Positions 343 to 62,105 of a stretch of DNA of 64,000 bases are shown here, in pieces. The notes beneath the pieces are model-generated. The model worked only from the letters and a program-made list of their open reading frames with translations, was not told the DNA's origin and did not search any database. The stretch is taken from IMG/VR virus record IMGVR_UViG_3300025536_000010, positions 62,001 through 126,000 of that record. One strand, written 5' to 3'. The position numbers and the translations under genes were made by a program. Numbering within the stretch: the stretch's first letter is position 1; every line of letters begins with the position of its first letter.

Positions 343-383
343 CTCGGGGAGCGGCGGCAAGGTATACTCTGTACGGAGGCACT

Positions 384-2709: not shown

Positions 2710-2810
2710 GAGGGACTCCGGGAGTCTGTGGCCTCCCGGGGAGCAACTGGCCCTGCCTGGATCGTTTCCGGGCAGGGCTTTCTCAAAACCGGCTTTTAGG
2801 AACGGACTCC

Positions 2811-7900: not shown

Positions 7901-8113
7901 GTGCTGACTCGGCGGCCGGGCGGCGTACACCAGCAGTGGCTGCCGGTCACGGACTGGTTCCACTACCGGGTCGACGCAAACGCACTGGTGACGCTGCGGC
8001 TTGGTAACGGCCGGGAGATCCACGTCACCAGGAACCACGAGTTCGTCATGGCAGACGGCACGCGGAAACTGGCGGGCGACCTGGTCGCGGGCGACGACCT
8101 GATGGAGGTTTGA
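4967..8113 (+). CDS. rpoB: Phage RNA polymerase beta subunit (N-extein, 949 aa) fused to N-terminal split-intein half
   Basis: RpoB motifs GTFVHKGNEYTVNHQQRLRPGVF, HMGFMDPLRTPES, GYNFEDAVVIS, GDKLSGRYGDKGVV, LNPLGVISRTN, FMKLHH; ends in an intein-like CFLAGT...VTRNH. Confidence 0.93.
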   Translation: MAGLLADFPKPKAPALDLPQTKAQSILSSGPLTAPPTPAPQMREFGDARLTRQYIYEDALNAARNIEPIEDERYRLRLADVDWADPERFTRKQRKAAILAGDTLARRLRGSWVLEDVATGKEIQRRAQIVGRIPYLSSMGTFVHKGNEYTVNHQQRLRPGVFARVKDNGEIESHVNVLPGKGVSHRYFLDPEKELFKLRLGQAEMPLLPLVQALGATDKEVREAWGDQLFAANYKHLDSGQTIKKLAARLLRRADQGLDEGTTRQRLADTINRMELDPEVTKRTLGQPYANLNKEVILNATKKLIQVNRREVDPDDRDSLAYQQFFGPEDLFAERLRRDHGNLRKQLFRKIALAGNLDKMPSGALTPQVEQVLLGSGLAQALEEINPAEVFDKQSRITRMGEGGIPSLDAIPDEARAVQPSHMGFMDPLRTPESFRVGVDLHMARSSRKGRDGRIYTSLRDQQGNMVWKSPQDVAEASIATPDVLKWDTKRVPVMKGGKLAYVPKNEVDFVLPNFEDSFSPLGNMVPLKSMVKGQRVAMASRMLTQALPLTAAEAPLVQSGLPGSKGARSFEEEYGKHMGAVAADSDGRVVDVRDGVIKLKYNDGRTDEVELYENHPFNRKTYINQTAVVKPGDAITKGQLLAHSNYTDKTGATALGTNLNVAYWPYLGYNFEDAVVISESGAKKMSSEHMYQHDLEVTDKHKIGKRHYVNLFPGKFDKKAYENLDDDGIVRPGTVVNHGDPLILAARQKEFAQNKIHKKKQAGYGDESLLWKHHDPGVVTDVVWGKNGPVVLVKSQSQMQVGDKLSGRYGDKGVVAAIVPDSQMPHGRDGNPFELLLNPLGVISRTNPAQKVEAQLGKIARLTGKPVKVPDFEDEEDLTAWAQMQLRMHGLKDTEDIVWPEKNMKVPGIHSGTRFFMKLHHTAESKGQGRGGGSYSMDDTPAKGGAQGCFLAGTHLHTAEHGFQDIARIVGRRMPVKVLTRRPGGVHQQWLPVTDWFHYRVDANALVTLRLGNGREIHVTRNHEFVMADGTRKLAGDLVAGDDLMEV
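7814..8110 (+). other. Split intein N-half (IntN, 99 aa)
   Basis: Block A Cys1 (CFLAGT), block B TxxH (VTRNH), ends LAGDLVAGDDL then stop; no C-terminal Asn. Confidence 0.9.
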
Positions 8114-8116
8114 GTC

Positions 8117-10030
8117 ATGGAAGACCTTGGAGTCTTGGCGGCGAAAGCCGCTACGCTGCGCGTGAAACTGGCAAACGTGGCGGCCTTGGCGGCTTCGCCG
8201 GCCGGCGAGAGCGCACTCGCGCGCCTGGGCGGTTGGCTGTCCGGCAAAGCATTCAAGCCGGTATCGCAGATGGCTCGTCCGCAGTTCGGCACGCTTAACG
8301 CGCTTGGTGAAGAAGCGCAGGCGCTGGCGCGCCAGCAGCGCATGAGCCGGCTGACTCTAGGCTTATCCGACAAGCCGTACTTCCATGTTCAAGATCGTGT
8401 TGGTGGCGGCTTAGCCGGTGCCTGGCTCGGTGCGTACGCAGACAGTAAAGTGAACGGCGAGGTCAACGACCTCTCCAGTGCCGGGCGCCGTGCGGCAGCG
8501 GTGCTCGGCGGCGGTTATCTGGGCGGTAAAGGCGCGAACTCGGCTTTGAACGTCGGCCGCAAGTTTACAGCGAACACGTCGCCGCTCATGGGTTACGACA
8601 CGGCTTTGATTCCGAAAGTGTCGCTCAAGTCTATCTGGAACCACGGCGTCATGGACCGCCCAATGGGCGGCATCGCGCGCGGCGGTAGCGGCAGTGAGGC
8701 TAACCCGCGCTACGAACTGCTGCGGCGCTATCTCGGCATTCACAAGAACGACGCGGCCAAAGACATGTTCATCTCGAACGCGGACAAGTCGCTGTCGTTC
8801 AACCCGGCAGTCGTAAAGCCTGGCTCGAAAACATGGCAGCAGTACATTGACCCAGGGCGGCAAGACAGCAGCCTGGGTGTCCGATTCAGCGAGGGCCTCA
8901 AGAACCCACCCAAGCTCGAAGTACCCAATAGCGCCCCGCCCAAGCTCGAAGTATCCGGCAACGCCCCGGCCAAGAGTCTCATTCTTCCGGGCGCTAACCC
9001 GGAACCGCCGCGCAGCGTTTTGCTGGGCGGTGGCCAGCCGACAGGGCCGGCTAAAAAGCTGATCCTGCCGGGACAGGAACCAAACGCACCTGCACCGGCG
9101 CTGGTCATGCCCGGTCAAGGTCAAGCGCCCAGACCTGCGCCGAAGCCAGCGGCCCCGGAGAAAACGTACAGCCTCAACGAGGGCGACCTGGCTAACCCAC
9201 CTGGGTACAGCGTCGACCAGAAGAACAACCCGTTCAACAATCTGTTCGGCTCGCACGACATGCGCCACGTCCAGGGCTCTGTTGAGCGCTTGCCGGGCGG
9301 CAAGTTCCGCACCTCGCACGAGCTAGGTGACACCTGGAACTTCCGTCTCGACCCGCACGAGACGCCAGAAGCCGCTGCTTACCTCAAAGGCATGGCTGGC
9401 ACGTCGCCTAACCGCTGGGGCGAGTTCCTCAAGCAGAAGGCGGACATCGGACACGCCAGTGCCTACGGCGGCCCGGATAAAACAGTGAGCGACCGGCTCA
9501 AGAACTACGGCATGCGCAGTGTCATCGAAGCGGCAGCACAGAAAGAAGCTCCGGTCATTCGGCAACGTATGCGCTTCACTTACGAGGCACCTACCGAAGC
9601 CAACGCGGCTTTCGCCAAGGCGACTGGCGGAGTAGCGCCGAGCGAGATCGAGTTGTTGTCGTCCAACGTCGCCGGGCCTGCCGTGCTTAGCCCCGAACGT
9701 CAGCAAATGCTGCGGCGGCTGCTTGGCGGCAGTGCAGTCGCGGGCACCGGCGGCCTTTACGCGAGCGGCCAGCTACCGAGCAAAGACACGCCCCAGGCTG
9801 CAACGCCACAGCCGCAGCCGCTAACGCCAAAACAAGAGGCACCTGCGTCGAAGACGTGGCGACCACGGGGACGAGAAGCACTATCGGCTTTCTTCCGCAA
9901 GCCGAAGTCTGAGCTATCTACTCGGCAGAAAATGATCCGCGGTGTCACCGACCGCGCGGCCGGCGGCATCCGCAGCTTCTGGGACCGTATGCAGCAGCGT
10001 TATGGCGGCAGTGGAGGGCTCGGAGCGTGA
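8117..10030 (+). CDS. Hypothetical 637-aa protein between the split-intein halves
   Basis: GGAGG SD; stop overlaps the next start (GTGA); N-terminal AKAA/VKLA, Gly zippers, Pro-rich repeats; no LAGLIDADG, HNH or GIY-YIG motif seen. Confidence 0.8.
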   Translation: MEDLGVLAAKAATLRVKLANVAALAASPAGESALARLGGWLSGKAFKPVSQMARPQFGTLNALGEEAQALARQQRMSRLTLGLSDKPYFHVQDRVGGGLAGAWLGAYADSKVNGEVNDLSSAGRRAAAVLGGGYLGGKGANSALNVGRKFTANTSPLMGYDTALIPKVSLKSIWNHGVMDRPMGGIARGGSGSEANPRYELLRRYLGIHKNDAAKDMFISNADKSLSFNPAVVKPGSKTWQQYIDPGRQDSSLGVRFSEGLKNPPKLEVPNSAPPKLEVSGNAPAKSLILPGANPEPPRSVLLGGGQPTGPAKKLILPGQEPNAPAPALVMPGQGQAPRPAPKPAAPEKTYSLNEGDLANPPGYSVDQKNNPFNNLFGSHDMRHVQGSVERLPGGKFRTSHELGDTWNFRLDPHETPEAAAYLKGMAGTSPNRWGEFLKQKADIGHASAYGGPDKTVSDRLKNYGMRSVIEAAAQKEAPVIRQRMRFTYEAPTEANAAFAKATGGVAPSEIELLSSNVAGPAVLSPERQQMLRRLLGGSAVAGTGGLYASGQLPSKDTPQAATPQPQPLTPKQEAPASKTWRPRGREALSAFFRKPKSELSTRQKMIRGVTDRAAGGIRSFWDRMQQRYGGSGGLGA

Positions 10031-10149
10031 AAATAACTTCGGTAGAACCGTTCGCCGGCACTGCGGATCTGGAGGGGAAGGTGGACGTCTACGACATTAC
10101 CGTCGCGGACCTCCACCTTTACGGCGTCTACGGAGTGCTGGTGTCCAAC
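10027..10149 (+). other. Split intein C-half (IntC, 41 aa)
   Basis: MKITS...VYDITV..LH.Y...GVLVSN followed by +1 Ser (10150); same architecture as cyanobacterial DnaE IntC (MIKI...VYDIGV..DHNF....ASN). Confidence 0.9.
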
Positions 10150-11787
10150 AGCAAGCGCGTGGCCATGCTGGACACCAACGCCCTGCTGTCGCACGGGGCC
10201 ACGGAAACGCTGCGTGACGTCCGCCTGATTCGCGGCCAGGGCCGAGCCAGTGAGAACTACTGGCTCCAGTTCATGATGGGTTACACGCCGGTCGACCCCA
10301 AGGTGCCGCAGACGCACGAGAAGTTCGTCAACCAGCTGAAAGCCTCTGGCATCAACGTGGTCCGCGACGGCTACCAGATGAACGTCATGGCCCTGACCAA
10401 CCGGGACGTGGACACCCTGGCGTCCGACCGCATCATCAAGAGCGGGGACACCGTGCGCTTCGACAAGGAACTCAAACCGATCCCGGGTGGCCTGTTCGAT
10501 CCCACGCTCACCGGCGGACACAACGGTAAGCGCTGGGCGGCTATCGAACTGCCCGAACCGATGCCCAACCCGGTCATGGAGGAGCCGATCCGGCGCATGC
10601 TGAACCTGACCCAGAAACAGTTCAGCGCCGTCCTGGCGGGCGAGCACGAACTGCCTAGCTTCGGCAGCGGCCCCAAAGCGATCACCCAGGCCCTGGAGAA
10701 CATCAACCTGGAACGCGAGTTGGCCAAAGCCAAGGCCGAATACACCCACGGACGCGGTACAGCCCGCGACGCTGCGCACCGGCGCTGGCAGTATCTCGAC
10801 GGCGCCCAGAAGCGCGGTCTGCATCCCAAAGATTGGATACTGAACCGCGTGCCAGTGCTGCCGCCGGCCTTCCGCCCGGTCAGCGTCATGGGGGACTCCG
10901 GCGTACCCCTGGTGTCGGACCCCAACTACCTCTACAAGGAGTTGCTCGACGCCAACAAGAATTTCACGGACATGGTCAAGCAGGTGGGGGACAAGAACGT
11001 CGGCAACGAGCGGCTGGCGGTCTACAACTCGTTCAAGGCGGTTACCGGCCTGGGCGAGCCTGTTCACCCCAAGCTGATCGAGAAAAACGTGAAAGGCATT
11101 CTCAAATCCGTTTTTGGAACCTCGCCGAAGTTCGGCACGGTGCAGCGGAAACTGCTGTCCTCGACCGTCGACAACGTGGGCCGCTCGGTCATTACGCCGA
11201 ACCCTGACTACGATATGGACACCATCGGCGTGCCCGAGAACCAGGCGTTCGACGTCTACTCGAAGTTCATCGTCCGCCGCCTGCGCCGCCGGGGCCTACC
11301 GATCCGCGAGGCTCTCAAGCACGTCCGCGACAAATCGGGCCTGGCCCGGGACGTTCTCCAGGAAGAGATGGACAACCGGCCGGTCTATGTCAACCGGGCT
11401 CCGGTGCTGCACAAATTCGGTATCATGGCCTTCCGCCCGCGGTTGATTAAGGGGGACGTCCTCCAGGTCAGCCCGTTGATCGTCAAAGGCTTCAACGCTG
11501 ACTTTGACGGGGACGCCATGCAGTTTCACGTCCCGTCGTCCGATGAAGCGGTCAAGGAAGCCTACGAGCGGATGCTGCCCAGTCGCTCGCTGCTTAGCCC
11601 GGCCGATTTCAAAAGCCCGGTCCACGCTCCTGGCCAGGAGTACCTGGGCGGGCTCTACTACGCGACGCGCCAGCGTGAGGAAGACAAGCAGCGGCGGCCC
11701 CGCGTGTTCCGTTCCGTAGCCGACGCCAAGAAGGCGCACCAGCGCGGCGAGATCACAGCGGACACGCCGATTCAGATCATGGAGTAA
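10027..11787 (+). CDS. rpoC: C-terminal split-intein half + RNAP beta C-terminus + catalytic N-half of beta'
   Basis: After the IntC: SKRVAMLDTNALLSHGA...QLKASGINV (beta end), then GGLFDP, VPVLPPAFRP, NRAPVLH, FNADFDGDAM (11494-11514), GLYYAT. Confidence 0.93.
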   Translation: MKITSVEPFAGTADLEGKVDVYDITVADLHLYGVYGVLVSNSKRVAMLDTNALLSHGATETLRDVRLIRGQGRASENYWLQFMMGYTPVDPKVPQTHEKFVNQLKASGINVVRDGYQMNVMALTNRDVDTLASDRIIKSGDTVRFDKELKPIPGGLFDPTLTGGHNGKRWAAIELPEPMPNPVMEEPIRRMLNLTQKQFSAVLAGEHELPSFGSGPKAITQALENINLERELAKAKAEYTHGRGTARDAAHRRWQYLDGAQKRGLHPKDWILNRVPVLPPAFRPVSVMGDSGVPLVSDPNYLYKELLDANKNFTDMVKQVGDKNVGNERLAVYNSFKAVTGLGEPVHPKLIEKNVKGILKSVFGTSPKFGTVQRKLLSSTVDNVGRSVITPNPDYDMDTIGVPENQAFDVYSKFIVRRLRRRGLPIREALKHVRDKSGLARDVLQEEMDNRPVYVNRAPVLHKFGIMAFRPRLIKGDVLQVSPLIVKGFNADFDGDAMQFHVPSSDEAVKEAYERMLPSRSLLSPADFKSPVHAPGQEYLGGLYYATRQREEDKQRRPRVFRSVADAKKAHQRGEITADTPIQIME

Positions 11788-14132: not shown

Positions 14133-14216
14133 GAGTCCTCCTTTCGGCGGGCGTGGGTTACAAAGGATTGTGGCCCACGTCCGTTTTCTAAAAGCCAGTT
14201 TTGAGGGAGGGAGCCC

Positions 14217-14627
14217 GTGTTCGATACCATCCGCTCTTGGTGGCGAGGCGTCCCCAAACACGAAGTCAAAGAGGTCGAGTGGGGGCGACGGATCGCCAAG
14301 GCGCTCACGACCTACGGCCTGGCCACCCGCGACGAGGTCCGCATCTTCGACGGCACGCGCATCGACCTGCTTACGCCACACCATGCCGTCGAGATCGACT
14401 GGGCGCCGAAGTGGGCTGAGGCCATCGGACAGTCGCTCTACTACGGCGTCCGGTCCAAAAAGCAGGCCGTTGTCCTCCTGCTGCTGTGCGACTCCCGCGA
14501 CGAGGCGTATATCGTCCGCTGCCGCGCGGTCTGCACTACGAATACGCCCAAGATTCCGATTTGGCTGCTCAACACCAAGAGCCGTGTTTTGTACCTCGCG
14601 GACGGACAGACGATCACGGTGGAGTAA
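14217..14627 (+). CDS. PD-(D/E)xK-like nuclease
   Basis: E...DGTRIDLLT...AVEID...KWAEAIGQSLYY, a restriction-endonuclease-fold pattern. Confidence 0.6.
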   Translation: MFDTIRSWWRGVPKHEVKEVEWGRRIAKALTTYGLATRDEVRIFDGTRIDLLTPHHAVEIDWAPKWAEAIGQSLYYGVRSKKQAVVLLLLCDSRDEAYIVRCRAVCTTNTPKIPIWLLNTKSRVLYLADGQTITVE

Positions 14628-17600
14628 TGCTCAAAACCACGATGGGGCAGCTGCTTGTCAATGACTCGCTGCCCGAAGACCTGCGCGATTACGGGCGCAT
14701 CCTCGACAAAAAGGGGATGGCGACCTTGCTGCGCACCGTGGCCGAGAAATACCCGGACCAGTACCGCGACGTCTCGAAGAAGCTGGCCGACATCGGCCGC
14801 AACGTCGCCAGCGAGTTTGGTGGCAACAGTTTCGGGCTGGCGCACATGGCCAAGTCCGGCCTGGGGCAGCAGTACCAGAAGAACTTGCAGGCGAAGCTCA
14901 AGCAGATCCTTGACGATGACAACCTGGACGACGCTAAGCGGCAGGAGTTGATCGTCAAAGCGGCGGGCATGGACCGCGAGAAGCAGATGAAGTCGATCCT
15001 GGAAGAGGCCATCAAAAACAAGAACCCGCTGGCCTCCCAGGTGATCTCCGGTTCGCGCGGCAACGAGATGAACCTGGCCTCGCTGCTGGACTCCGACCGG
15101 CTGTACTCCGACCACCGGGATCAGCCGCTGGCCATCCCTATCGTCCACAGCTACAGCCAGGGCCTGCGGCCCATCGAATACTGGGCTGGCACCTACGGCG
15201 CCCGCAAGGGCGTCATGGCGACCAAGTTTGCCACCCAGGACGCCGGCTTTTTGAGCAAGCAGTTAAACCAGGTCGCCCACCGTCTGATGGTGGTGGACGA
15301 GGACGACCCGCGCTACGAAGGCGACCCGACACCGCGCGGCTTGCCGGTAGACACAGACGACCCCGACAACGAAGGGGCGCTGCTGGGCATGGACGTTGGC
15401 CCGTACAAGCGGAACACCGCGCTGACTCCCAAAATTCTCAAGGACTTGAAAAGGAGGGGACATGCTCGCCTTCTTGTCCGAAGCCCGGTGGTGGGCGGCA
15501 GTCCTGATGGTGGTATTTACGCACGGGATGTTGGTGTGCGTGAACGTGGCACTCTTCCTGGTCGCGGTGAGCAGGTTGGACTCACCGCTGCCCAGGCGCT
15601 GTCGGAGCCGCTGTCGCAGGGGCAGCTGTCGGCTAAGCATTCGGGCGGCGTCGCGGGGCAGGAGAAAGCGGTCGGCGGCTTCCAGTACATCAACCAGCTG
15701 ATTCAGGTGCCCAAGGTGTTCAAAGGCGGGGCGGCGCACTCAAACGAGGACGGCAGCGTCGAACGGATCGAGGAAGGTCCGGCCGGTGGCCAGTTCGTCT
15801 GGATCAACGGCAAGCGGCACTACGTCGGCGAGGGTTTTGAGTTGAAGGTGAAACCTGGCGACCAGGTCGAGGCTGGTGACCTGATCTCGGAAGGTCTGCC
15901 CAACCTGAACGTCGTTGTGGACCATAAGGGACGTGGCGAGGGCGCACGCTATTTCGTCAACTCGTTCGTGGACGCGATGCGCGGGGCCGGGCTCAAGGTC
16001 AACCGGCGCAACGTGGAAGTGCTGGCTCGGGGGCTTATCAACCATGTCCGACTCACCGACGAGTTCCAGGGCAACCTGCCCGACGACGTTGTCCCCTACA
16101 GCACCCTTGAGCACCTCTACGAACCACGCGAGGGTCACCAGACTCTACGAACTGAGCGCGCTTTGGGACAATACCTTGAGCGCCCAGTTCTACACTACAG
16201 CATCGGCACGAAGGTCCGCCCTTCGGTCCTTAAAGAGCTTCAACAGTTTGGTATTAAGGAAGTTGCTGTTCACGCAGAGCCGCCTCCGTTCAAGTCCGAG
16301 ATGATCCGTGGTATGTACTCCCTCCAGCACGACCCGGATTGGATGACCCGCATGTACGGCTCCGGCCAGAAGTCGAGCCTGCTGGAGGCGGTTCACCGTG
16401 GCCGCAGTTCCAACGAACTCGGCACCAGTTTCGTGCCCGGTCTGGCTCGCGCCGAAGAGTTCGGGCGCGTGGGCCAGGTACGCCAGCCGCTACCCGGCAC
16501 GAAGCCGCCGCTCATCGAGCCCGTCACGGAGGACGAGGAGATGCCCAAGAAGAAGCCAACGACGCCGCCGACTTCGCCGATCGCGCTGAACCTCCAGCCG
16601 CCCAAGACCCCCGCACCCAAGAGCATGTTCGGCGGCATGGGGTCCATTTTCAAGCTCTCCTGTGACGCCCTAGAACAGCGGCGGGAGGCCGAGATCCTGC
16701 TGGAGAAAGCTGCTAAGCGGATCGAACAGGTTCGCCAGGCCACAGCCAAGACCAAGCAGACGCAGCAGGTGAAAGCCAGCGCACCTTTGCAGCCTGTTCG
16801 ACGCGCGCAGCAGATCAAGACGGCCGAAACGAACATCGGCAGCAGCACCGTCACGGCTGGTGGCACGACGATCAAGCCGAGCAGTCAGGGCAGCGCAGCA
16901 CCGAAACCGCCCACACCGGCAGCACCGCCAGGCGGGGACGCCTGGAGCGGTCCGCGCGGACCCGCCAACCCGACTTTCGGCGTCGGCCGCAATCCGCACG
17001 CGCTGGGCCAGGGTGGCTACAACCCGGGCATGCCGTCCGGCATCGTCAACGACCCGGAAGCGTTCTCCCGCTTCGTTGACAGCAGCCAACGATTCGGCGG
17101 GTTGACCGGCGGGGCTGTTGCTTTCGGCTCTGGCCTCGACCAGAACGCCGTGGCCACGCTGACCAACCAGAGTCCCTACGTCAAAGGGCACTACGGCTAC
17201 AGCGAGTTCGACCGGCCCACGCCGCCAGGTTACCACCCCGGCATCGGGCGCCCCGGCATGCGCGGCGGCCAACCTGGCAGGTACGGAGGCCACCCCGGTA
17301 TGCAGGACGCTGACGGCATGGACTTCGACGGTGGCTACCCCGGTTTTGACCCCTGGCAGGATCAAGGCGGGCAGCAGCAGACTCAACAGCAGGCGCCACC
17401 GCAGCCCGGTTTCGGCGCGGGCGACATGCTCCAGATGGCTCCCGGCATAACGTCTATGGGCTCCACTGGCGCGCAGCTGGGCGGGCTAGCCACACGCGGG
17501 CTGGGAGCCGCAGCGAACGCCACAGGGGCCACGCGCGTCGGCGGCGCGCTGGGACGCACTGGCGGGGCGTTGGGCCGGGCCGGCGGCTTGGTCGGCAAAG

Positions 17601-18658
17601 CCGCTACGCCGCTGGCTGTAGCCGTGGACACCGGCCAGATGATCGGACATTCGATCAACGACATCAGGAACGGACAGTTTTTCGGCGGCAACGGCGAAGT
17701 AGCCCAGGGTACGCGCCGCACGATGGACGAAATGAACAACGCCACGGACCTCTCGCGCTGGACGGACCCGAACGTCAGCAAGTTCGACCAGCTGATGGAC
17801 ACGACGCACCTCATCAACCCGGTGAGCTATGCACGGTCAGCGGGTGGCGTCATCGGCGACGTGGCCAACACAGCCATCTACGACATGCCGGCCATCCTGG
17901 GCGGCGATTTCAAAGACATGACCAGGCTAGAGTCGTCGTCGAACATCGGCAAGCACTTCGAGTCCCAGCAGAAGATCCAGCAGATGCTCTCCGACGACCA
18001 GCACAAAAAGACCCTGGCCGGCAAACAGGACGGTATCAACCCGTTCCAGTTCACGCCGCATTTCGACCCGAACAAGGACGCACTGACCAACACCTACAAC
18101 AGCCTGACGCGCTCGAAGAACCCGCTTGCCAACGTCATCGGCACCGCCCAGGATCTGCACACGTCCGTCTCGACCATGAAAGGCCAGACCGAGGGCCAGG
18201 CTCGCGGTTTCGAGCAGATCATGTCCGACCGCCGAGCCGCGAACGAGCAGCGGGCGACGCAGCTGCGCGACCTCAAGGGTAAAGGTTTCGCCCTGTCGCC
18301 GGAGGAACAGGCCATCGTCGCCAAGGCCGACGCCGACCGCAACAAGACGGAGGCCCAGCTGGTCCTGGAGGCATCCGGGTTCAAGCCAGGCGATACGAAT
18401 ACCGCGCTGTACATGACGATGGGGCACAAGTCGATCAACCCATTCGATGGCGAGCAGCGCGCCAGCGCCCTCAACCCTGTCTCCGGTCGCCGCTTGGCCG
18501 AGGAAGCGCAGACGGCCATCGACCACGGCGACACCGGCCAGCGTGTCGCCGGGCACGCCGTCAAGGACTTCACGAGCCCGGTGGCTAGCTGGGAACAGAT
18601 CCGCAGCGGTGACTTCCGCGTGCCCGGGTGGAACAGCGTTAAGTCGCTGTGGGACTAA
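14627..18658 (+). CDS. rpoC: RNAP beta' C-terminal half fused to a long low-complexity extension
   Basis: Starts MLKTTMGQLL; SGSRGN; bridge helix GARKGVMATKFATQDAGFLSKQL; trigger loop AAQALSEPLSQGQLSAKHSGG; RRNVEVLARG; RNAP homology ends near 16470. Confidence 0.9.
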   Translation: MLKTTMGQLLVNDSLPEDLRDYGRILDKKGMATLLRTVAEKYPDQYRDVSKKLADIGRNVASEFGGNSFGLAHMAKSGLGQQYQKNLQAKLKQILDDDNLDDAKRQELIVKAAGMDREKQMKSILEEAIKNKNPLASQVISGSRGNEMNLASLLDSDRLYSDHRDQPLAIPIVHSYSQGLRPIEYWAGTYGARKGVMATKFATQDAGFLSKQLNQVAHRLMVVDEDDPRYEGDPTPRGLPVDTDDPDNEGALLGMDVGPYKRNTALTPKILKDLKRRGHARLLVRSPVVGGSPDGGIYARDVGVRERGTLPGRGEQVGLTAAQALSEPLSQGQLSAKHSGGVAGQEKAVGGFQYINQLIQVPKVFKGGAAHSNEDGSVERIEEGPAGGQFVWINGKRHYVGEGFELKVKPGDQVEAGDLISEGLPNLNVVVDHKGRGEGARYFVNSFVDAMRGAGLKVNRRNVEVLARGLINHVRLTDEFQGNLPDDVVPYSTLEHLYEPREGHQTLRTERALGQYLERPVLHYSIGTKVRPSVLKELQQFGIKEVAVHAEPPPFKSEMIRGMYSLQHDPDWMTRMYGSGQKSSLLEAVHRGRSSNELGTSFVPGLARAEEFGRVGQVRQPLPGTKPPLIEPVTEDEEMPKKKPTTPPTSPIALNLQPPKTPAPKSMFGGMGSIFKLSCDALEQRREAEILLEKAAKRIEQVRQATAKTKQTQQVKASAPLQPVRRAQQIKTAETNIGSSTVTAGGTTIKPSSQGSAAPKPPTPAAPPGGDAWSGPRGPANPTFGVGRNPHALGQGGYNPGMPSGIVNDPEAFSRFVDSSQRFGGLTGGAVAFGSGLDQNAVATLTNQSPYVKGHYGYSEFDRPTPPGYHPGIGRPGMRGGQPGRYGGHPGMQDADGMDFDGGYPGFDPWQDQGGQQQTQQQAPPQPGFGAGDMLQMAPGITSMGSTGAQLGGLATRGLGAAANATGATRVGGALGRTGGALGRAGGLVGKAATPLAVAVDTGQMIGHSINDIRNGQFFGGNGEVAQGTRRTMDEMNNATDLSRWTDPNVSKFDQLMDTTHLINPVSYARSAGGVIGDVANTAIYDMPAILGGDFKDMTRLESSSNIGKHFESQQKIQQMLSDDQHKKTLAGKQDGINPFQFTPHFDPNKDALTNTYNSLTRSKNPLANVIGTAQDLHTSVSTMKGQTEGQARGFEQIMSDRRAANEQRATQLRDLKGKGFALSPEEQAIVAKADADRNKTEAQLVLEASGFKPGDTNTALYMTMGHKSINPFDGEQRASALNPVSGRRLAEEAQTAIDHGDTGQRVAGHAVKDFTSPVASWEQIRSGDFRVPGWNSVKSLWD

Positions 18659-22845: not shown

Positions 22846-22868
22846 CCCTAAAAAGTGGATTTTGAAAC

Positions 22869-23924: not shown

Positions 23925-23966
23925 GCGCGGCTGCGGTAGACTAAGGGAGAGGTTAAGGAGGACCAA

Positions 23967-32021: not shown

Positions 32022-32057
32022 CTAAAAGCCAGTTTTTGACGCGCAGGGAGGCGTATC

Positions 32058-38835: not shown

Positions 38836-38842
38836 CCGGTGG

Positions 38843-38875
38843 CTAAATAACGACCGTTTGTGCGTCAAGATAGGT
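38843..38875 (+). promoter_or_regulatory. Repeated bipartite motif copy 1 (candidate phage promoter)
   Basis: CTAAATAA-N10-TGCGTCAAGATAGGT; second copy at 39594. Confidence 0.6.
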
Positions 38876-38947
38876 AGGGTCGAGCGATCCTTCTTAGCTG
38901 CGGCTAGGATTACACAAGTAGGCTCATGCCTATCAAGGAGCACAGCG

Positions 38948-39271
38948 ATGGCAGCGATTATCTTCACGCACGGGTTCGAGACAGACAAAAAGAAGTTGAA
39001 GAAGCGGTATCCTGCGGTAGACACCGGCGTCCAACAAATCGTTGGACAGTTCGTTCGGAACGAAAAGGTGGACGGTGTCCGCGTGCCCGACGCACCAGGC
39101 TGTTTGAAAGTGCGCGTAAAGAACGACGACAACTCGCGCGGTAAAAGCGCCGGCTACCGCGTGCTGTACAGCACGTTGTCCGGCGGTACAGTGTTGCTGT
39201 TCGCCATTTACGAGAAGACGAAAGAAGACAAGAAAGCGGCGGAAGTCCGGGCGTTGCGTAACCGTCCCTAA
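38948..39271 (+). CDS. RelE/HigB-like toxin-family protein
   Basis: F..DKKKLKKRYP...LKVRVKNDDNSRGKSAGYRVLY...LLFAIYEK, the RelE-family GKSGGYRVIY pattern; AAGGAG SD. Confidence 0.72.
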   Translation: MAAIIFTHGFETDKKKLKKRYPAVDTGVQQIVGQFVRNEKVDGVRVPDAPGCLKVRVKNDDNSRGKSAGYRVLYSTLSGGTVLLFAIYEKTKEDKKAAEVRALRNRP

Positions 39272-39285
39272 CCAGGAGAGACAAC

Positions 39286-39597
39286 ATGGGTTTGCCGAGC
39301 GAGTTAGAGAAGTTCTTGCAGGACAAGTTCCCCGGTTGCGTTGTCAAGCACATCAACAACGTGGAGCCGGGTGATCTCGATCCCGCCGCGCTGGCAGAGT
39401 TGGACCAGCGGCGTCAGGAGATACTGGATCGGGACCGGCAGTCCCTGCGCAATGGCGTGTGCGGGAACTGCGGCGCAAAGTACCCGGGAGAATGGCCGCC
39501 GCCGGACGAAGTCGGCCTAGCCGAGGGTTGGGGCCTCTACACGGACGAGGAGGACGAGCCGGTACTGCTCGTCTGCCCCTGCGACGACGCTGACTAA
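39286..39597 (+). CDS. Hypothetical acidic protein with CxxC / CxC
   Basis: AGGAG SD; CGNCG...CPC. Confidence 0.7.
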   Translation: MGLPSELEKFLQDKFPGCVVKHINNVEPGDLDPAALAELDQRRQEILDRDRQSLRNGVCGNCGAKYPGEWPPPDEVGLAEGWGLYTDEEDEPVLLVCPCDDAD

Positions 39598-39626
39598 ATA
39601 ATGCCCCCTTTTGCGTCAGGATAAGT
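39594..39626 (+). promoter_or_regulatory. Repeated bipartite motif copy 2
   Basis: CTAAATAA-N10-TGCGTCAGGATAAGT. Confidence 0.6.
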
Positions 39627-39667
39627 GAGAGGACTCTCACCTATCCATCTACCGAAAGGGTGCAATC

Positions 39668-39850
39668 ATGGCTCAGCAGACGCAGTTCGTGACGGTCAAG
39701 GAAGAAGTGGCGGCCTTTGAGGCTAACCTGTACGCTCCGGCGTATCAGAGGGGCGGGTTATGGGGTCGGTTGCCGGCCCAGACGTTCCGGCCGATTAACA
39801 GGACGGCGGCCAAGTCCCAGGGACAGGGCAAGTTGCGGAAGGCAAGCTAG
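39668..39850 (+). CDS. Small hypothetical protein
   Basis: ACCGAAAGGG upstream; followed by a terminator. Confidence 0.55.
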   Translation: MAQQTQFVTVKEEVAAFEANLYAPAYQRGGLWGRLPAQTFRPINRTAAKSQGQGKLRKAS

Positions 39851-39856
39851 GTCTAG

Positions 39857-39900
39857 GCAGAAGCGGCCCGGACGGCGGACGTCCGGGCCATTCTGTTTTT
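39857..39900 (+). terminator. Intrinsic terminator
   Basis: GGCCCGGACG-GCGGA-CGTCCGGGCC followed by TTCTGTTTTT. Confidence 0.7.
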
Positions 39901-39917
39901 ACCCGGGAGGGCCGAAC

Positions 39918-40085
39918 GTGGACGACTTGAAAATTGTCAAAGAAGAGGACAAACTCGTCGAGGAGGCGCTGGCGACAACCGACTTCGCGGCGGTGGTCCG
40001 CGAGAAAGACCAGGGCGAAGAGGATACGAAGGAGTACCACAAAGCCCGCGGTCGCAAACGGGACCGGCTCGTCCAGGCCGGCTAA
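39918..40085 (+). CDS. Small charged hypothetical protein
   Basis: GTG start after GGGAGG. Confidence 0.55.
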   Translation: MDDLKIVKEEDKLVEEALATTDFAAVVREKDQGEEDTKEYHKARGRKRDRLVQAG

Positions 40086-40143
40086 TCTAAAAAATGGTTT
40101 TGAACGGAGGCTAGCCTCGCACATGCGAAAGGAGAACGAAGGA

Positions 40144-40296
40144 ATGTCGAAGGATACCGTGCAGGACATCCTGATCGTCACACGAGGCGACAACATCGCC
40201 GTCGACGTCGACCACGGGCCGGGGGTCAACACAGGCACCAGGAGGGTGACCGACCCCTACGCCCACATGTGGATCGACGAAGGGGGTGAGGGGTAG
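40144..40296 (+). CDS. Small hypothetical protein
   Basis: ATG after GAAAGGAG...GAAGG; ends WIDEGGEG. Confidence 0.5.
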   Translation: MSKDTVQDILIVTRGDNIAVDVDHGPGVNTGTRRVTDPYAHMWIDEGGEG

Positions 40297-40315
40297 CGAA
40301 CCGAGGCAACACAAC

Positions 40316-40344
40316 AGGGGCACGCCGCATGGCGTGCCCTTTTT
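40316..40344 (+). terminator. Intrinsic terminator
   Basis: GGGCACGCC-GCAT-GGCGTGCCC followed by TTTTT. Confidence 0.75.
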
Positions 40345-40371
40345 CGTTTACCACACCGAAAGGAATGCACC

Positions 40372-40755
40372 ATGTTCAATTTCTACTGCACGCCGCGTGC
40401 GTTCGACAACGGCACGCTCTACATCACCACCGACTTCCGGCCGCACCGTGTCTACGCCGTGTGGCTCAAAATGGGCCATGTCGAAGACCGCGTCGGCACC
40501 CACGGGTCCATGTGGGGCCGGTTGGAAGACGGCAGCCAGGCTACCCTGATCTTCCGGGCCGTCGAGTGCTGCACGGACGCCGAGTTGGCCGTCAGTGAAT
40601 GCGTCGTCACTGGTAGGAGTGTTTGCCAGCTGGTGCGCCGGTTCGAGCGCTACGCCCAGAAGCACAAGGGCATTCGCGTGCGTCTCTACGCGGAGGGCAA
40701 CAACCTGGCGATCAAGAGCGGCCGGTACAACCTGCCCAAGCGCGCCGCCGTCTAG
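40372..40755 (+). CDS. Hypothetical protein
   Basis: ACCGAAAGGA SD; 127 aa. Confidence 0.7.
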   Translation: MFNFYCTPRAFDNGTLYITTDFRPHRVYAVWLKMGHVEDRVGTHGSMWGRLEDGSQATLIFRAVECCTDAELAVSECVVTGRSVCQLVRRFERYAQKHKGIRVRLYAEGNNLAIKSGRYNLPKRAAV

Positions 40756-40771
40756 TAACAAAGTGTGTTCC

Positions 40772-40798
40772 GAGCGGGCTTTGCCAGCCCGCTCTTTT
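40772..40798 (+). terminator. Intrinsic terminator
   Basis: GAGCGGGCT-TTGCC-AGCCCGCTC followed by TTTT. Confidence 0.75.
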
Positions 40799-40825
40799 CG
40801 TTTTAACCGTGAAAGGAGTTTTATC

Positions 40826-41959
40826 ATGGTGACGGCTCAGACCACTGGGAACGGTATCATCGACGGCAACAACCTGCAACAGGCTCTCACGACTGCCGGG
40901 TTGCGCGCAATCATCGGATTCACGGCGGCGCTGACAGCGCTGCTGCCAAAGATGCGGGCGAACCACTACTGGGTCGCGGACGTGTTCGCGGAGAGCATTC
41001 TCCAGTTCAAGTACGGCGTGGCCTTCACGCTGCAAAAGGCGATCAAGCTGAGCCAGATCGACCTGGCGGCGAGTATGTTCAACGGCGCGCGTCTGGACAT
41101 GCGCCTGGACGGGCTCAGGTCGCTGCGCATTGCAGAGTCGTTCGCGGCGTACAAGCACGGCATGAAGCCGATCATCCTGTGGAAGCGTCCCGACGGTCGC
41201 TACATTGTTCTGGAAGGCAATCACATTCTGTGCGCTTGCCGGGCGATGGGGATCGAGACACTGTGGGCCTACGTCATCGAGTGCGACGAAGCGACCGCAG
41301 GGCTTATCACGCGCAGCTGGAACACCGTGCAAGGGTTCGGCCAAAAAGAAGAGGACAGCTACACCCTGGCGGTGGATGAACTGACCTCGCGCGGCGAAGC
41401 CGCCGTCGTGCTCCAGACGATCAAGGACGTCGCTAAGATTTGGGGCCTGCGGTGGAAGCGGCTCCAGGAGCGCTACCGTCAGCGCCTGTTCCTCAATCAC
41501 ATGTTCAAGGCCAAAATCGACGGGGGGTTGGGCTTGAAGCCGCACGGGCACACGGACTGTTTCAGCGAGCGGACGATTGAGGCCATCATGGGCCTCAACG
41601 ACGCCGAGAAACAGCGTGAACTGTCCGAAGCTATCATGAACCACGGATTCTCGTGGGGTGTGGTCAGCAACATCGTCGCTACCAGCACGGAAGGCATGGC
41701 AGCGTTTAAGGCAGCCATCGTCACATGGACAAACGCGACGTCGGGTACGTCGCTTGATGGTACGGTGGTGCGTGTTCGGCTCACCGAACAACAGCGGATC
41801 AAGAAAGCGATTGATTCGTTTGCAAAGAGCCTCGACAGCATGCCCGACGATCTGGCCAAGGCATGCACCGCCAGCGTTGTCATGTCTCTGCGCCCGAAAC
41901 TCGACAAAATCTTGCAGCGCTGCCCGGTCATTCGGGAGGCTACCTATGGCAAGTATTGA
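40826..41959 (+). CDS. ParB/Sulfiredoxin-like N-terminal domain protein
   Basis: PIILWKRPDGRYIVLEGNHILCACRAMGIETLWAYVI resembles ParB box II; ATG 40826 after GAAAGGAG. Confidence 0.62.
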   Translation: MVTAQTTGNGIIDGNNLQQALTTAGLRAIIGFTAALTALLPKMRANHYWVADVFAESILQFKYGVAFTLQKAIKLSQIDLAASMFNGARLDMRLDGLRSLRIAESFAAYKHGMKPIILWKRPDGRYIVLEGNHILCACRAMGIETLWAYVIECDEATAGLITRSWNTVQGFGQKEEDSYTLAVDELTSRGEAAVVLQTIKDVAKIWGLRWKRLQERYRQRLFLNHMFKAKIDGGLGLKPHGHTDCFSERTIEAIMGLNDAEKQRELSEAIMNHGFSWGVVSNIVATSTEGMAAFKAAIVTWTNATSGTSLDGTVVRVRLTEQQRIKKAIDSFAKSLDSMPDDLAKACTASVVMSLRPKLDKILQRCPVIREATYGKY

Positions 41960-42284
41960 CACCGACTACGTCCGCCGGAAATTCGGCGACGGGCACTGGC
42001 GAACGTTCGACGAGATGGCAGCGGCGGCGGCAACGGACGTGCCCGCTGCCGAGGCCATTCGCGTCTGCCTATCGAAGGGGCGGGGGTACGCAAAGAAGAC
42101 GCGCGAAGATCAGTACCGCCTCGGCGTCCGTGCAATGGTCTGCCGCGTTTTCGGACAACTCCAGCGAGACGGCTGGACCGACAGCCGAGCGCGCGACGCG
42201 ACAGACGAACAAGAGTACCGCATCCTGACTGAAACTGAACGGAAACCGACGACGCGCGATCGTTGGACAAAGGCCGGCGACTGA
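41946..42284 (+). CDS. Hypothetical protein
   Basis: ATG 41946 after GGGAGG, overlapping the ParB-like stop. Confidence 0.6.
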   Translation: MASIDTDYVRRKFGDGHWRTFDEMAAAAATDVPAAEAIRVCLSKGRGYAKKTREDQYRLGVRAMVCRVFGQLQRDGWTDSRARDATDEQEYRILTETERKPTTRDRWTKAGD

Positions 42285-42335
42285 GCCAGCCTTGACGTCG
42301 AGAACCGAAAGACCCATGCTACCCTTATAGGGAGT

Positions 42336-47645: not shown

Positions 47646-47690
47646 CCAGGCACGCCGCGCAGTCATAGGCTAAAAGCCAGATTTTGGATC

Positions 47691-61376: not shown

Positions 61377-62105
61377 ATGGACGACTTCTTGGAGCCAGAT
61401 TTCGCGGAACCCTACAAGGCGTGGAAGGCAACGCCAGGCCCCGACACGAACGCTGGCATGCTCAAGGCACTGACGCCCACGATTGAGGGGGCCATCCGCA
61501 CGCACGTCGGCGAGCCCAACCCGCTGCTGACCAGCCGAGCCCGTTTGATGGCTCTGGAGGGCCTCCAGGGCTACGACCCGACGCGGGGCCGCCTCCAGAC
61601 GCACATGTACAACCACTTGCTGGGGCTCAAGCGGGCCAACCGACAGCAGACGACCATCCTCAAGGTGCCGGAGCGGATCTCGTTGGACCGCTACCACCTG
61701 GAGAACGCCACGAATGAACTGTCCAACGAACTCGGCCGCGAGCCCACGGACATGGAGATCGCCGACCGGGTCGGTTTCTCGCCGCGGCGGATCGCCCGCG
61801 TGCGCAGCTACAGCCCAGCCGTCGCCGAGGGCACCATCGACGAGTCCACGGAAGGCGGCGGCGTGATCGGTGGCGTCGAAGACCCGCTGCGAAGACAGCA
61901 GACCGCAGTGTACGATGTCGTCTACGACGAACTCGACACCTACCACCGGCAGATCATGGAGTTGGCCTTGGGCCTCAACGGCCGCCGACCACTCTCGAAC
62001 CAACAGATCGCCCAGAAGATGAACCGCAGCCCCGGGGCCATCAGCCAGGCTAAGCTGCGCATCCAAAAGATGCTCGACGAGGTCAACGAACTCGGACTGA
62101 GGTAA
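61377..62105 (+). CDS. Sigma-70 family RNA polymerase sigma factor (FliA/SigF-like size)
   Basis: Region 2 (ALEGLQGYDPTRG), region 3 (LKVP...LSNELGREPTDMEIADRVG), region 4 HTH (LSNQQIAQKMNRSPGAISQ). Confidence 0.85.
   Translation: MDDFLEPDFAEPYKAWKATPGPDTNAGMLKALTPTIEGAIRTHVGEPNPLLTSRARLMALEGLQGYDPTRGRLQTHMYNHLLGLKRANRQQTTILKVPERISLDRYHLENATNELSNELGREPTDMEIADRVGFSPRRIARVRSYSPAVAEGTIDESTEGGGVIGGVEDPLRRQQTAVYDVVYDELDTYHRQIMELALGLNGRRPLSNQQIAQKMNRSPGAISQAKLRIQKMLDEVNELGLR

What the first reader, a model, noticed from the sequence alone, without database searches (positions are those of the whole stretch)
38843..39645. Duplicated bipartite motif CTAAATAA-N10-TGCGTCARGATARGT: candidate phage-sigma promoter
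Seen: two copies (38843-38875, 39594-39626) share both boxes and identical spacing but have different spacers. Each heads a gene group in the accessory island and is followed by a hairpin; copy 2 runs into GGATAAGTGAGAG-GA-CTCTCACCTATCC. Known: sigma28-type promoters are TAAA...GCCGATAA, and the window encodes a FliA/SigF-sized sigma. Inference: early or middle promoters for the phage RNAP holoenzyme. Caveat: the TAA in copy 2 is also a stop codon, and the spacing is longer than canonical sigma28.
Basis: partly seen in the sequence, partly recalled or inferred. Interest (0 to 1): 0.66.

Follow-up and report, generated by a model that had tools for sequence, protein, structure and literature searches.

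The report
Conserved promoter of a huge-phage family
The two repeats are real copies of a two-box promoter signal (CTAAAT, 17 bases, G-T-CAnnAT) that recurs at matching places in dozens of related ~200-kb phages carrying their own RNA polymerase and sigma factor. It sits in front of small, swappable accessory genes.

Summary
The window is part of a 234,886-bp phage genome that encodes RNA polymerase beta, a split beta' and one sigma factor. The motif occurs five times in that genome, always on the coding strand and outside genes. The C of CTAAA is always exactly 21 nt from the G of GTCA.

In 32 related IMG/VR phages (GC 43-70%) the same pattern gives 79 hits against 23 for a reversed control, and 73 of the 79 lie on the coding strand. 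Four of the five sites are positional orthologues in the nearest relative. At one shared locus only the boxes stay invariant across six genomes. A model built without this genome finds only four hits in it, all of them motif sites and including both window copies.

The anatomy is that of a sigma70-family promoter:
- a -35 box CTAAAT, identical to the classic sigma28 -35;
- a 17-bp spacer;
- a -10 box (G-14, T-13, CATAAT) that resembles an extended -10;
- a conserved TG at the predicted start;
- a 5' stem-loop, then a Shine-Dalgarno sequence and a small ORF.

Copy 1 heads a RelE/ParE-like pair and copy 2 heads a 60-aa gene, both inside an inserted island. The best reading is a promoter read by the phage's own sigma, but that assignment is inferred. 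No RNA data exist.

The parts
38843..38875 (+). Copy 1 of the promoter. The -35 box CTAAAT is at 38843-38848, the spacer is 17 bp, G-14/T-13 are at 38864-38865 and the -10 box CAAGAT is at 38866-38871. The predicted start is about 38876-38878.
   Evidence: E 6.5e-3 with a model built without this genome. The positional orthologue lies 9-22 nt after the same upstream gene in G002 and G003.
38876..38947 (+). Predicted 5' leader of the copy-1 transcript. It holds three consecutive stem-loops, then AAGGAG 8 nt before the ATG at 38948.
   Evidence: RNAfold gives -23.8 kcal/mol. Leaders across the family are more structured than shuffles.
38948..39271 (+). RelE/ParE-like toxin gene (107 aa), the first gene behind copy 1.
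   Evidence: phrog_5869, E 9.5e-10. ESM Atlas: feature score 0.95 and structure TM 0.87 to RelE/ParE clusters. There is no Pfam, PDB or PADLOC hit.
39286..39597 (+). Acidic, Cys-containing 103-aa ORF, a possible partner of the toxin-like gene. Its stop codon TAA lies inside the CTAAAT box of copy 2.
   Evidence: No family hit.
39594..39626 (+). Copy 2 of the promoter. The -35 box CTAAAT is at 39594-39599, G-14/T-13 are at 39615-39616 and the -10 box CAGGAT is at 39617-39622. The predicted start is about 39627-39629.
   Evidence: best hit in the genome, E 1.4e-4, with the model built without this genome. No orthologue was found in relatives; the p60 homologue in G003 has no such box.
39619..39646 (+). 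Inverted repeat GGATAAGTGAGAG-GA-CTCTCACCTATCC spanning the -10 box to about +18. The part that lies in the RNA gives a short 5' stem-loop.
   Evidence: Sequence; fold.
39668..39850 (+). 60-aa ORF headed by copy 2. A homologue lies just before the p302 orthologue in G003.
   Evidence: 57% identity.
39865..39899 (+). Intrinsic-terminator-like hairpin plus T-run, the probable end of both transcription units.
38836..42335 (+). Accessory island inserted between the conserved genes 37912-38835 (p307) and 42336-43244 (p302).
   Evidence: The orthologues are about 370 bp apart in G001 and less than 300 bp apart in 27 of 46 relatives.
61377..62105 (+). Phage sigma factor (242 aa; regions 2.x-4), the candidate reader of the motif.
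   Evidence: Pfam Sigma70_r3 and NCBIfam. A single-copy orthologue is present in 33/33 relatives. Profile search against PDB.
4967..8113 (+). RNA polymerase beta subunit gene.
   Evidence: Pfam RNA_pol_Rpb2_6, E 4e-53.
10027..11787 (+). RNA polymerase beta' gene, N-terminal part.
   Evidence: Pfam RNA_pol_Rpb1_2, E 2e-26.
14486..18658 (+). RNA polymerase beta' gene, C-terminal part.
   Evidence: Pfam RNA_pol_Rpb1_5, E 1.4e-16.

Best explanation
The two repeats are members of a small, family-wide class of sigma70-type promoters.

Anatomy (shown): a -35 box CTAAAT (variants CTTAAT, GTAAAT), a 17-bp spacer with an A/T patch and a conserved G at -16, a -10 region G(-14) T/G(-13) C-A-T-A-A-T, and a conserved TG 3-4 nt further on, where transcription is predicted to start.

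Mechanism (inferred): the phage's own 242-aa sigma binds CTAAAT with region 4 and the G-T-CAnnAT box with regions 2.4/3.0, most likely on the phage-encoded beta/beta' core. It then starts an RNA whose first 15-40 nt fold into a stem-loop, which probably protects the 5' end. A 30-95 nt leader with a Shine-Dalgarno sequence and one or a few small accessory genes follow.

In this window, copy 1 drives a RelE/ParE-like gene plus a 103-aa partner. Copy 2 drives a 60-aa gene. Both units probably end at the terminator at 39865-39899.

The promoters travel with their cargo. They mark insertion-prone slots in an otherwise conserved backbone, in the manner of morons or T4 PeSL cassettes.

If this sigma and polymerase are packed in the virion, as in the distant relative Arash, these would be the first promoters used after injection. 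That step is speculative.
For: The motif is not a chance repeat.
- The genome holds five sites, all on the + strand and none inside a gene. The three that lie right behind an upstream + strand gene (both window copies and 229801) abut or overlap its end or a divergent gene's start, and spacing is identical.
- A calibrated model over all 235 kb, both strands, finds only these five up to E=10.
- A model built from relatives alone finds four hits up to E=10, all of them these sites, including both window copies.

It is conserved across the family.
- There are 79 hits in 32 relatives against 23 for the reversed control, and 73 of 79 lie on the strand that carries the capsid gene.
- Positions not used for selection are also conserved: G at -16 in 82%, A/T at offsets 15-16 in more than 93%, G/T at offset 33 in 99%.
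- TG is at least 90% conserved after one gap is allowed.

The sites are positional orthologues.
- The four G002 sites flank orthologues of the genes beside G000 sites 40977, 100843, 150536 and 229801.
- At the 150536 locus in six genomes, only CTAAA, GTCA-A-T and TG are invariant.
- Five genomes with no pattern hit carry variants at that same locus.

The context is that of a promoter.
- A start codon with a Shine-Dalgarno sequence lies 60-130 nt from the motif start at most of the 68 sites.
- Terminators often lie upstream.
- The 45 nt after the predicted start are more structured than shuffles (mean z -2.0) and than sequence further downstream (p 2.6e-6).

- The sigma is single-copy in 33/33 relatives.
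- The motif is kept in phages of 43-70% GC, while its -35 box is unlike TTGACA.
- The simple sigma70 consensus scan finds nothing in the island.

The promoters go with cargo.
- 12 of 19 relatives with an insert of at least 300 bp between p307 and p302 have a model hit in the insert, against 0 of 27 without an insert.
- The cargo differs between G000, G002 and G003.
Against: - There is no transcript evidence. The only public run holding this DNA is the source metagenome.
- The sigma-to-motif assignment is circumstantial. The -10 box, with its -11 A, -7 T and -14 G, could also be opened by a host primary sigma.
- Five sites cannot account for expression of some 270 genes. Other signals must exist; two further intergenic motif classes were seen, and one of them might be the sigma's main target instead.
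- The two window copies have weak -10 hexamers (CAAGAT, CAGGAT).
- The motif is absent from Arash and Vibrio phage D69, which carry a distantly related sigma.
- One site, 150536, is missed by the leave-out model.
Confidence: 0.6

Rival explanations
1. These are promoters read by the host's primary sigma through the near-consensus extended -10 box. In this reading the conserved CTAAAT is the site of a second, phage-encoded factor, as the MotA box is in T4 middle promoters, or an upstream enhancer element.
For: The family -10 region T/C-G-T-CATAAT differs from TGnTATAAT only at -12 and keeps -11 A, -7 T and -14 G. The sigma profile itself is closest to primary sigmas. The genome also holds -10-only boxes G[GT]TAnAnT in intergenic regions, so recognition through the -10 alone seems to be used there.
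Against: CTAAAT sits at exactly the canonical 17-bp distance, the geometry expected for region 4 of one sigma. No MotA/AsiA-like factor was found, though none was searched for specifically. A host-read promoter would be expected to keep a TTGACA-like -35 in at least some hosts. Only one variant (G027, TTGAAA) does.
Confidence: 0.2
2. These are host FliA (sigma28)-dependent promoters, which would tie the accessory genes to the motile state of the host.
For: CTAAA is the classic sigma28 -35 box, and the ATAA of GCCGATAA falls at the same offset (own knowledge of the consensus; offsets).
Against: The 'CGA' core of the sigma28 -10 box is replaced by TCA at essentially all sites. The motif is kept across phages of very different GC content, whose hosts need not be flagellated. 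A phage sigma is universally present.
Confidence: 0.04
3. The motif is not primarily a promoter. It would be a protein-binding or recombination site that bounds mobile gene cassettes, so that the repeat flanking the RelE/ParE pair is a footprint of cassette insertion.
For: The two window copies flank a two-gene module. Model hits occur only where cargo is inserted. Tandem arrays of cassettes with the motif exist in G007, G031 and G012.
Against: The motif is strictly oriented with the genes. Its bipartite geometry matches -35/-10 with the key -11 A and -7 T. It is followed at a fixed distance by TG, a leader, a Shine-Dalgarno sequence and an ORF. Homology between the two window copies stops at the functional boxes. 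The recombination role is compatible with, and probably secondary to, promoter function, as in PeSLs.
Confidence: 0.06
4. The motif is a chance similarity of two A/T-rich patches in a GC-rich genome.
For: None beyond the short length of the boxes.
Confidence: 0.01

Closest known systems
Sigma28 / FliA-SigD class promoters (TAAA-N15-GCCGATAA; in B. subtilis CTAAA-N16-CCGATAT; consensus from own knowledge)
   Same: The -35 box is identical (CTAAA). The distance from the -35 box to the ATAA of the -10 region is the same. Both have a composite -10 with a conserved G two bases upstream of the hexamer.
   Different: The core 'CGA' is replaced by 'TCA'. The last base of the box is a conserved T, as at -7 of sigma70 promoters. 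The cognate sigma is not a FliA/WhiG member.
Extended -10 promoters of primary sigma factors (TGnTATAAT)
   Same: G at -14, A at -11 and T at -7. The family consensus CATAAT matches 5 of 6 positions, with 17 bp to the upstream box.
   Different: T at -15 is not conserved. -12 is C, not T. The -35 box is CTAAAT, not TTGACA. The two window copies have CAAGAT and CAGGAT.
PeSL (promoter-early stem-loop) cassettes of T4-type phages (PMC2839356, PMC4122927) and 'morons' of lambdoid phages (own knowledge)
   Same: A short conserved promoter plus stem-loop is repeated in hyperplastic regions. It flanks small, variable ORFs between conserved core genes, and cargo differs between close relatives at the same slot.
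   Different: PeSL promoters are host sigma70 early promoters and the stem-loop is an upstream terminator. Here the -35 box is non-canonical, the conserved stem-loop is at the 5' end of the transcript, and recombination at the motif has not been shown.
Promoters of phage-encoded specificity factors (SPO1 gp28 and gp33/34; T4 gp55 TATAAATA; phiKZ and AR9 non-virion RNAP promoters: PMC7598289, PMC5449584)
   Same: A phage-specific consensus, distinct from the host's, is used to programme transcription.
   Different: The T4 late and AR9 or phiKZ promoters are single short boxes near -10. The reviewed jumbo phages have either an RNAP without a sigma or a sigma without an RNAP (PMC7824862, PMC13282480). 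This family has both, and its motif is a classical two-box promoter.
Salmonella phage Arash (PMC10585845) and Vibrio phages D69/D148/D181
   Same: These are the nearest isolates by RNAP beta (about 30% identity) and sigma (28-30% over the N-terminal half). Arash virions contain beta, beta' and sigma.
   Different: The motif is not found in Arash or D69 beyond chance, and no promoters have been described for them.

Membership tests
Sigma70-family two-box promoter (generic) | Two conserved boxes separated by a fixed spacer of about 17 bp | tested here: met
   CTAAAT and CAnnAT are exactly 17 bp apart at all 67 distinct sites aligned without gaps.
Sigma70-family two-box promoter (generic) | A at -11 and T at -7 of the downstream hexamer | tested here: met
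   A24 is present in 67/67 and T28 in 63/67. These positions were part of the search pattern, so the count is partly circular. The variants found by orthology keep A24 in all five and T28 in four of five.
Sigma70-family two-box promoter (generic) | Lies upstream of genes, oriented with them, outside coding sequence | tested here: met
   (73/79 on the coding strand).
Sigma70-family two-box promoter (generic) | Transcription start 5-9 nt downstream of the -10 box | not testable with these tools
   No RNA run holds this DNA. The only indirect sign is the conserved TG.
Sigma28 / FliA-class promoter | -35 element TAAA | tested here: met
   CTAAA(T) is present.
Sigma28 / FliA-class promoter | -10 element GCCGATAA with the CGA core | tested here: not met
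   The consensus is G-T-C-A-T-A-A-T, and no site has CGA at the corresponding offset.
Sigma28 / FliA-class promoter | Cognate sigma belongs to the FliA/WhiG family | tested here: not met
   TIGR02479 scores 20.8 bits against a cut-off of 189.6. The profile matches SigA at 4e-14 against FliA 1rp3 at 8e-7.
Extended -10 promoter of a primary sigma | TG at -15/-14 upstream of TATAAT | tested here: inconclusive
   G-14 is invariant but was part of the search pattern. -15 is C in 51% and T in 30% of sites. The hexamer is CATAAT, with C at -12.
Extended -10 promoter of a primary sigma | -35 TTGACA, or no conserved -35 at all | tested here: not met
   The conserved box is CTAAAT. Only G027 has TTGAAA. 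The consensus scan finds no sigma70-type site in 38500-42500.
PeSL / moron-type mobile regulatory cassette | Repeated promoter-plus-stem-loop motif flanking variable ORFs in hyperplastic regions | tested here: met
PeSL / moron-type mobile regulatory cassette | Indel or replacement junctions fall within the motif (recombination at the motif) | tested here: inconclusive
   Cargo begins right after the promoter in G000, G002 and G003. No pair of genomes was close enough to map a junction.
T4-type late promoter (TATAAATA, gp55) | A single 8-bp box at -10 with no -35 requirement | tested here: not met
   CTAAATAA resembles the box, but it sits at -35 of a second, equally conserved box at fixed spacing.

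The most novel reading that the evidence does not exclude
These could be the cognate promoters of a complete, phage-encoded bacterial-type transcription system (beta, split beta', sigma) in a large, uncultured family of about 200-kb phages. They could be the first promoters fired by a virion-delivered holoenzyme. Because each is bundled with a 5' stem-loop and its cargo, they could also act as portable expression modules that let accessory genes move between slots and between phages whatever the host. That would give the first defined promoter-sigma pair for a phage lineage that has both an RNAP and a sigma.
Probability: 0.3. Interest if true: 0.75.

Novelty: new variant of a known kind. Interest (0 to 1): 0.6.

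Why it matters
Two reviews describe known jumbo phages as having either their own multisubunit RNA polymerase without a sigma or a sigma without a polymerase (PMC7824862, PMC13282480). This family has both: at least 109 IMG/VR contigs share its capsid protein, and the nearest isolate is Arash. No promoter has been described for it.

A short, sharply conserved two-box consensus makes the system directly testable. One can express the sigma, with phage or host core, and assay 40-bp fragments. The consensus also allows annotation of transcription units in uncultured huge phages. It identifies the small set of genes (toxin-like, zinc-ribbon, membrane and unknown proteins) that the phage places under this special control. 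It offers a compact orthogonal promoter-sigma pair as well.

The finding also shows that accessory cargo in these genomes arrives with its own family-specific promoter.

Tried and rejected
- RNA evidence. The look-up of sequencing runs returned only the source DNA run from a subsurface metagenome.
- Close DNA relatives among isolated phages. None were found.
- First relative searches. Single-protein searches with p307 and RNAP beta gave only 1 relative each. The capsid alignment then gave at least 109.
- Arash and Vibrio phage D69. The motif is not there beyond chance.
- Rfam. No family matched in the window or at the other three sites.
- Protein families for the island and the other cargo genes. 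Pfam, NCBIfam, PADLOC and PDB were mostly blank. Only the ESM Atlas placed the 107-aa ORF with RelE/ParE.
- A second 'sigma region 4' hit in the genome. It is an 83-aa GerE/LuxR regulator, not a sigma.
- CTAAATAA as a T4-type late promoter, and as the same signal as the commoner CTAAAAGCCAnTTTTGAG. The latter is a separate quasi-palindrome without the downstream box and is restricted to 3 of 19 genomes.
- Covariation between sigma residues and box variants. This was considered but not attempted. Any trait would follow the genome tree, and genomes with CTTAAT also use CTAAAT.
- Virion packaging of this phage's sigma. It could not be supported beyond analogy with Arash. The neighbouring 543-aa protein has no match in isolated phages.
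- Structure prediction and complex prediction were not run, because they would not decide the reader of the motif.

Full report
**What is there**

The two 33-nt copies are exactly as described, at 38843-38875 and 39594-39626. With three mismatches allowed they are still the only hits in the window, and shuffles give none. Copy 1 begins 8 nt after the stop of a 307-aa gene (p307, 37912-38835). The TAA inside copy 2 is the stop codon of ORF 39286-39597.

The window is bases 62001-126000 of a single 234,886-bp IMG/VR virus record. The record is rated 100% complete and comes from a subsurface metagenome. It has 63% GC, and nearly all its genes are on the + strand. It encodes RNA polymerase beta, a beta' split into two ORFs, and one 242-aa sigma factor.

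**More copies in the same genome**

CTAAATAA occurs only three times in the genome, and each time a GTCA box follows it. Allowing CTAAA(A/T) gives five sites: genome 40977, 100843, 101594, 150536 and 229801. All are on the + strand. All lie outside genes, at a gene end or next to a divergent gene's start. All have exactly 21 nt from the C of CTAAA to the G of GTCA. Site 40977 follows a hairpin and T-run.

A sequence model of the motif, searched over the whole genome on both strands, returns these five and nothing else up to E=10. A second model, built only from other genomes, returns four hits up to E=10. All four are these sites, and both window copies are among them at E 1.4e-4 and 6.5e-3.

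**Relatives**

No isolated phage is close. The nearest by polymerase and sigma are Salmonella phage Arash and three Vibrio phages, at about 30% identity, and they lack the motif.

An alignment of the major capsid protein (window 30989-31930) with its orthologue in one IMG/VR relative retrieved at least 109 related contigs. Many are 180-226 kb. In 32 of these records the pattern CTAAAT-N15-GTCA-NN-AT, with at most one mismatch, gives 79 hits against 23 for the reversed control. Of the 79, 73 lie on the strand that carries the capsid gene (sums are mine). The GC content of these phages runs from 43% to 70%.

I aligned 67 distinct sites from 24 genomes without gaps. Positions that were not part of the search pattern are also conserved:
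- G at offset 19 in 82% of sites;
- A or T at offsets 15 and 16 in more than 93%;
- T-A at offsets 25-26;
- G or T at offset 33 in 99%.

With one gap allowed, a TG 3-4 nt after the downstream box is at least 90% conserved.

**Orthology**

The four exact sites of the nearest relative (G002) are flanked by orthologues of the genes beside G000 sites 40977, 100843, 150536 and 229801.

At the 150536 locus, aligned across six genomes, only CTAAA, GTCA-A-T and TG are invariant. Everything around them has diverged.

Five genomes that gave no pattern hit carry variants at that same locus:
- CTAAAT-N15-GGCATATT (G020);
- CTAAAT-N15-GGCATATA (G025);
- GTAAAT-N15-GGCATATT (G016);
- GTTAAT-N15-TGTCATAAT (G030);
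- TTGAAA-N17-CATTAT (G027).

Copy 2 of the window is the one site without an orthologue. The homologue of its 60-aa gene in G003 has no such box.

**Anatomy**

Read as a sigma70-family promoter, the parts are:
- a -35 box CTAAAT;
- a 17-bp spacer;
- a -10 hexamer CATAAT in the family consensus (CAAGAT and CAGGAT in the window copies, CACAAT in the other three G000 sites), with -11 A and -7 T kept;
- G at -14, T or G at -13, and G at -16.

The predicted start is at or just after the conserved TG, at about 38876-38878 for copy 1 and 39627-39629 for copy 2.

At most of the 68 sites a start codon with a Shine-Dalgarno sequence follows 60-130 nt from the motif start. The ORFs are mostly 46-220 aa.

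The 45 nt after the predicted start are more structured than dinucleotide shuffles (mean z -2.0). They are also more structured than sequence 60 nt further on (mean z -0.63; Wilcoxon p 2.6e-6).

**Comparison with sigma28**

The -35 box equals the classic sigma28 box (consensus recalled from my own knowledge). Against the family consensus the spacing is canonical, not long. The ATAA of GCCGATAA and the ATAA of GTCATAAT fall at the same offset.

The sigma28 core CGA is absent, and the box is at least as close to an extended -10.

The sigma is not a FliA or SigF member. All NCBIfam hits are far below their cut-offs. A profile of 27 orthologues matches primary SigA proteins best, at E 4e-14, against FliA at 8e-7 and SigF at 1.6e-4.

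**Who reads it**

The sigma is present once in all 33 relatives tested. The motif is kept across phages whose hosts must differ widely, judging by their GC content. Its -35 box is unlike the near-universal TTGACA, and it sits at the geometry expected for region 4 of a single sigma. This makes the phage sigma the most economical reader, but that is inference.

A host primary sigma using the extended -10 box, with CTAAAT bound by another factor, is not excluded.

**Cargo and mobility**

In G001 the orthologues of p307 and p302 (42336-43244) lie about 370 bp apart. In 27 of 46 relatives they are less than 300 bp apart, and none of those 27 has a motif hit there. In 12 of the 19 relatives with a larger insert, a hit lies in the insert, often 9-53 nt after p307.

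The cargo behind the orthologous promoter differs between genomes:
- G000 carries a RelE/ParE-like gene plus a 103-aa ORF, then copy 2, the 60-aa gene and a terminator, and further on a ParB-like gene;
- G002 carries a small lipoprotein-like ORF and a 106-aa ORF;
- G003 carries two membrane proteins and the 60-aa homologue.

At the 40977 slot G000 carries about 6 kb of cargo, which includes a double zinc-ribbon protein and a MYG1-family protein. G002 has about 0.5 kb there.

Arrays of such cassettes occur in G007, G031 and G012. This matches the moron and PeSL idea (PMC2839356, PMC4122927). No recombination junction could be mapped.

**Limits**

- There is no transcript evidence.
- Five sites cannot drive the whole genome. 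Two other intergenic motif classes exist, and their readers are unknown.
- Early timing rests only on Arash packing beta, beta' and sigma in its virions (PMC10585845) and on the sigma gene lying among structural genes in Arash.

**Verdict**

It is a real, family-conserved promoter class with a new consensus, most likely read by the phage's own sigma. It is a new variant of a known kind.

Noticed in passing
window 14188-14205, 22848-22866, 32022-32039, 47670-47687, 2782-2799 (-), variant at 40087; 17 copies in the genome: A second, commoner intergenic motif, CTAAAAGCCAnTTTTGAG. It also occurs with its centre inverted (CTAAAAAGTGGATTTTGAA). Most copies lie 7-36 nt before start codons, some of which have no Shine-Dalgarno sequence. 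It is a quasi-palindrome (perfect AAAACCGGTTTT in G005) and is present in only 3 of 19 family genomes tested. It could be a late promoter, an operator or an RNA element.
   Followed up: partly
window 361-368, 2217-2224, 23935-23942; 13 intergenic copies in the genome: A third class of -10-like boxes, G[GT]TA[GTA]A[CA]T (for example GGTAGACT, GGTATACT). On the + strand, 13 of 20 hits are intergenic, and most of those lie 14-70 nt before start codons. No conserved -35 box accompanies them.
   Followed up: partly
L168:1274-1525 (genome 51274-51525): An 83-aa GerE/LuxR-type helix-turn-helix protein (Pfam GerE, E 5.7e-16). It is a candidate dimeric binder of the palindromic motif above. This was not tested.
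   Followed up: no
window 10027-11787 and 14486-18658: RNA polymerase beta' is split into two ORFs about 2.7 kb apart, with two other ORFs (245 and 491 aa) between them. The same split is seen in relative G001. A 637-aa ORF also lies between beta and beta'-N.
   Followed up: partly
L167:1834-1915 (genome 229834-229915): The leader behind site 229801 has a strong 5' hairpin. A second hairpin with a U-run (terminator-like) follows, before the Shine-Dalgarno sequence of a 692-aa gene. Terminator-like leader hairpins also occur in the orthologous leaders of G002 and G005. This may be an attenuator or a small RNA.
   Followed up: partly
window 38948-39597: A RelE/ParE-like toxin gene is followed by an acidic 103-aa ORF with CxxC and CPC motifs, rather than by a recognisable antitoxin. 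This may be an unusual toxin-antitoxin pair carried by a lytic-looking huge phage.
   Followed up: partly
relatives: L110, L122, L124, L125, L127; genome 40030-40046 (L165:30-46): Terminator T-runs are often followed by a conserved TAGCTAT(T/C)AG just before the next promoter box. In G000 this lies before a GGTAGACT box. The sequence holds stop codons in several frames on both strands.
   Followed up: no
L109 (G007), L110-L111 (G031), L114 (G012): Tandem arrays of 3-7 small-gene cassettes, each with its own copy of the promoter and a near-identical 5' stem-loop. These look like local expansions of paralogous early-type genes.
   Followed up: partly
window 33977-37897: A 1306-aa collagen-repeat protein (Pfam Collagen, E 1.5e-61) lies upstream of p307. 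At the equivalent place, relative G001 has an orthologue of a gene that sits elsewhere in G000 (genome 145814-147151).
   Followed up: no
L010:14384-14530 (G001, - strand): Directly upstream of one G001 promoter copy lie several repeats of GTTCCACGCGTTCCAC and GGAACAAC. They look like iterons and may mark a replication origin or a regulator array.
   Followed up: no
window 40595-41959: A 454-aa ORF in the same island has a weak ParB-like match (phrog_723, E 8e-5).
   Followed up: no
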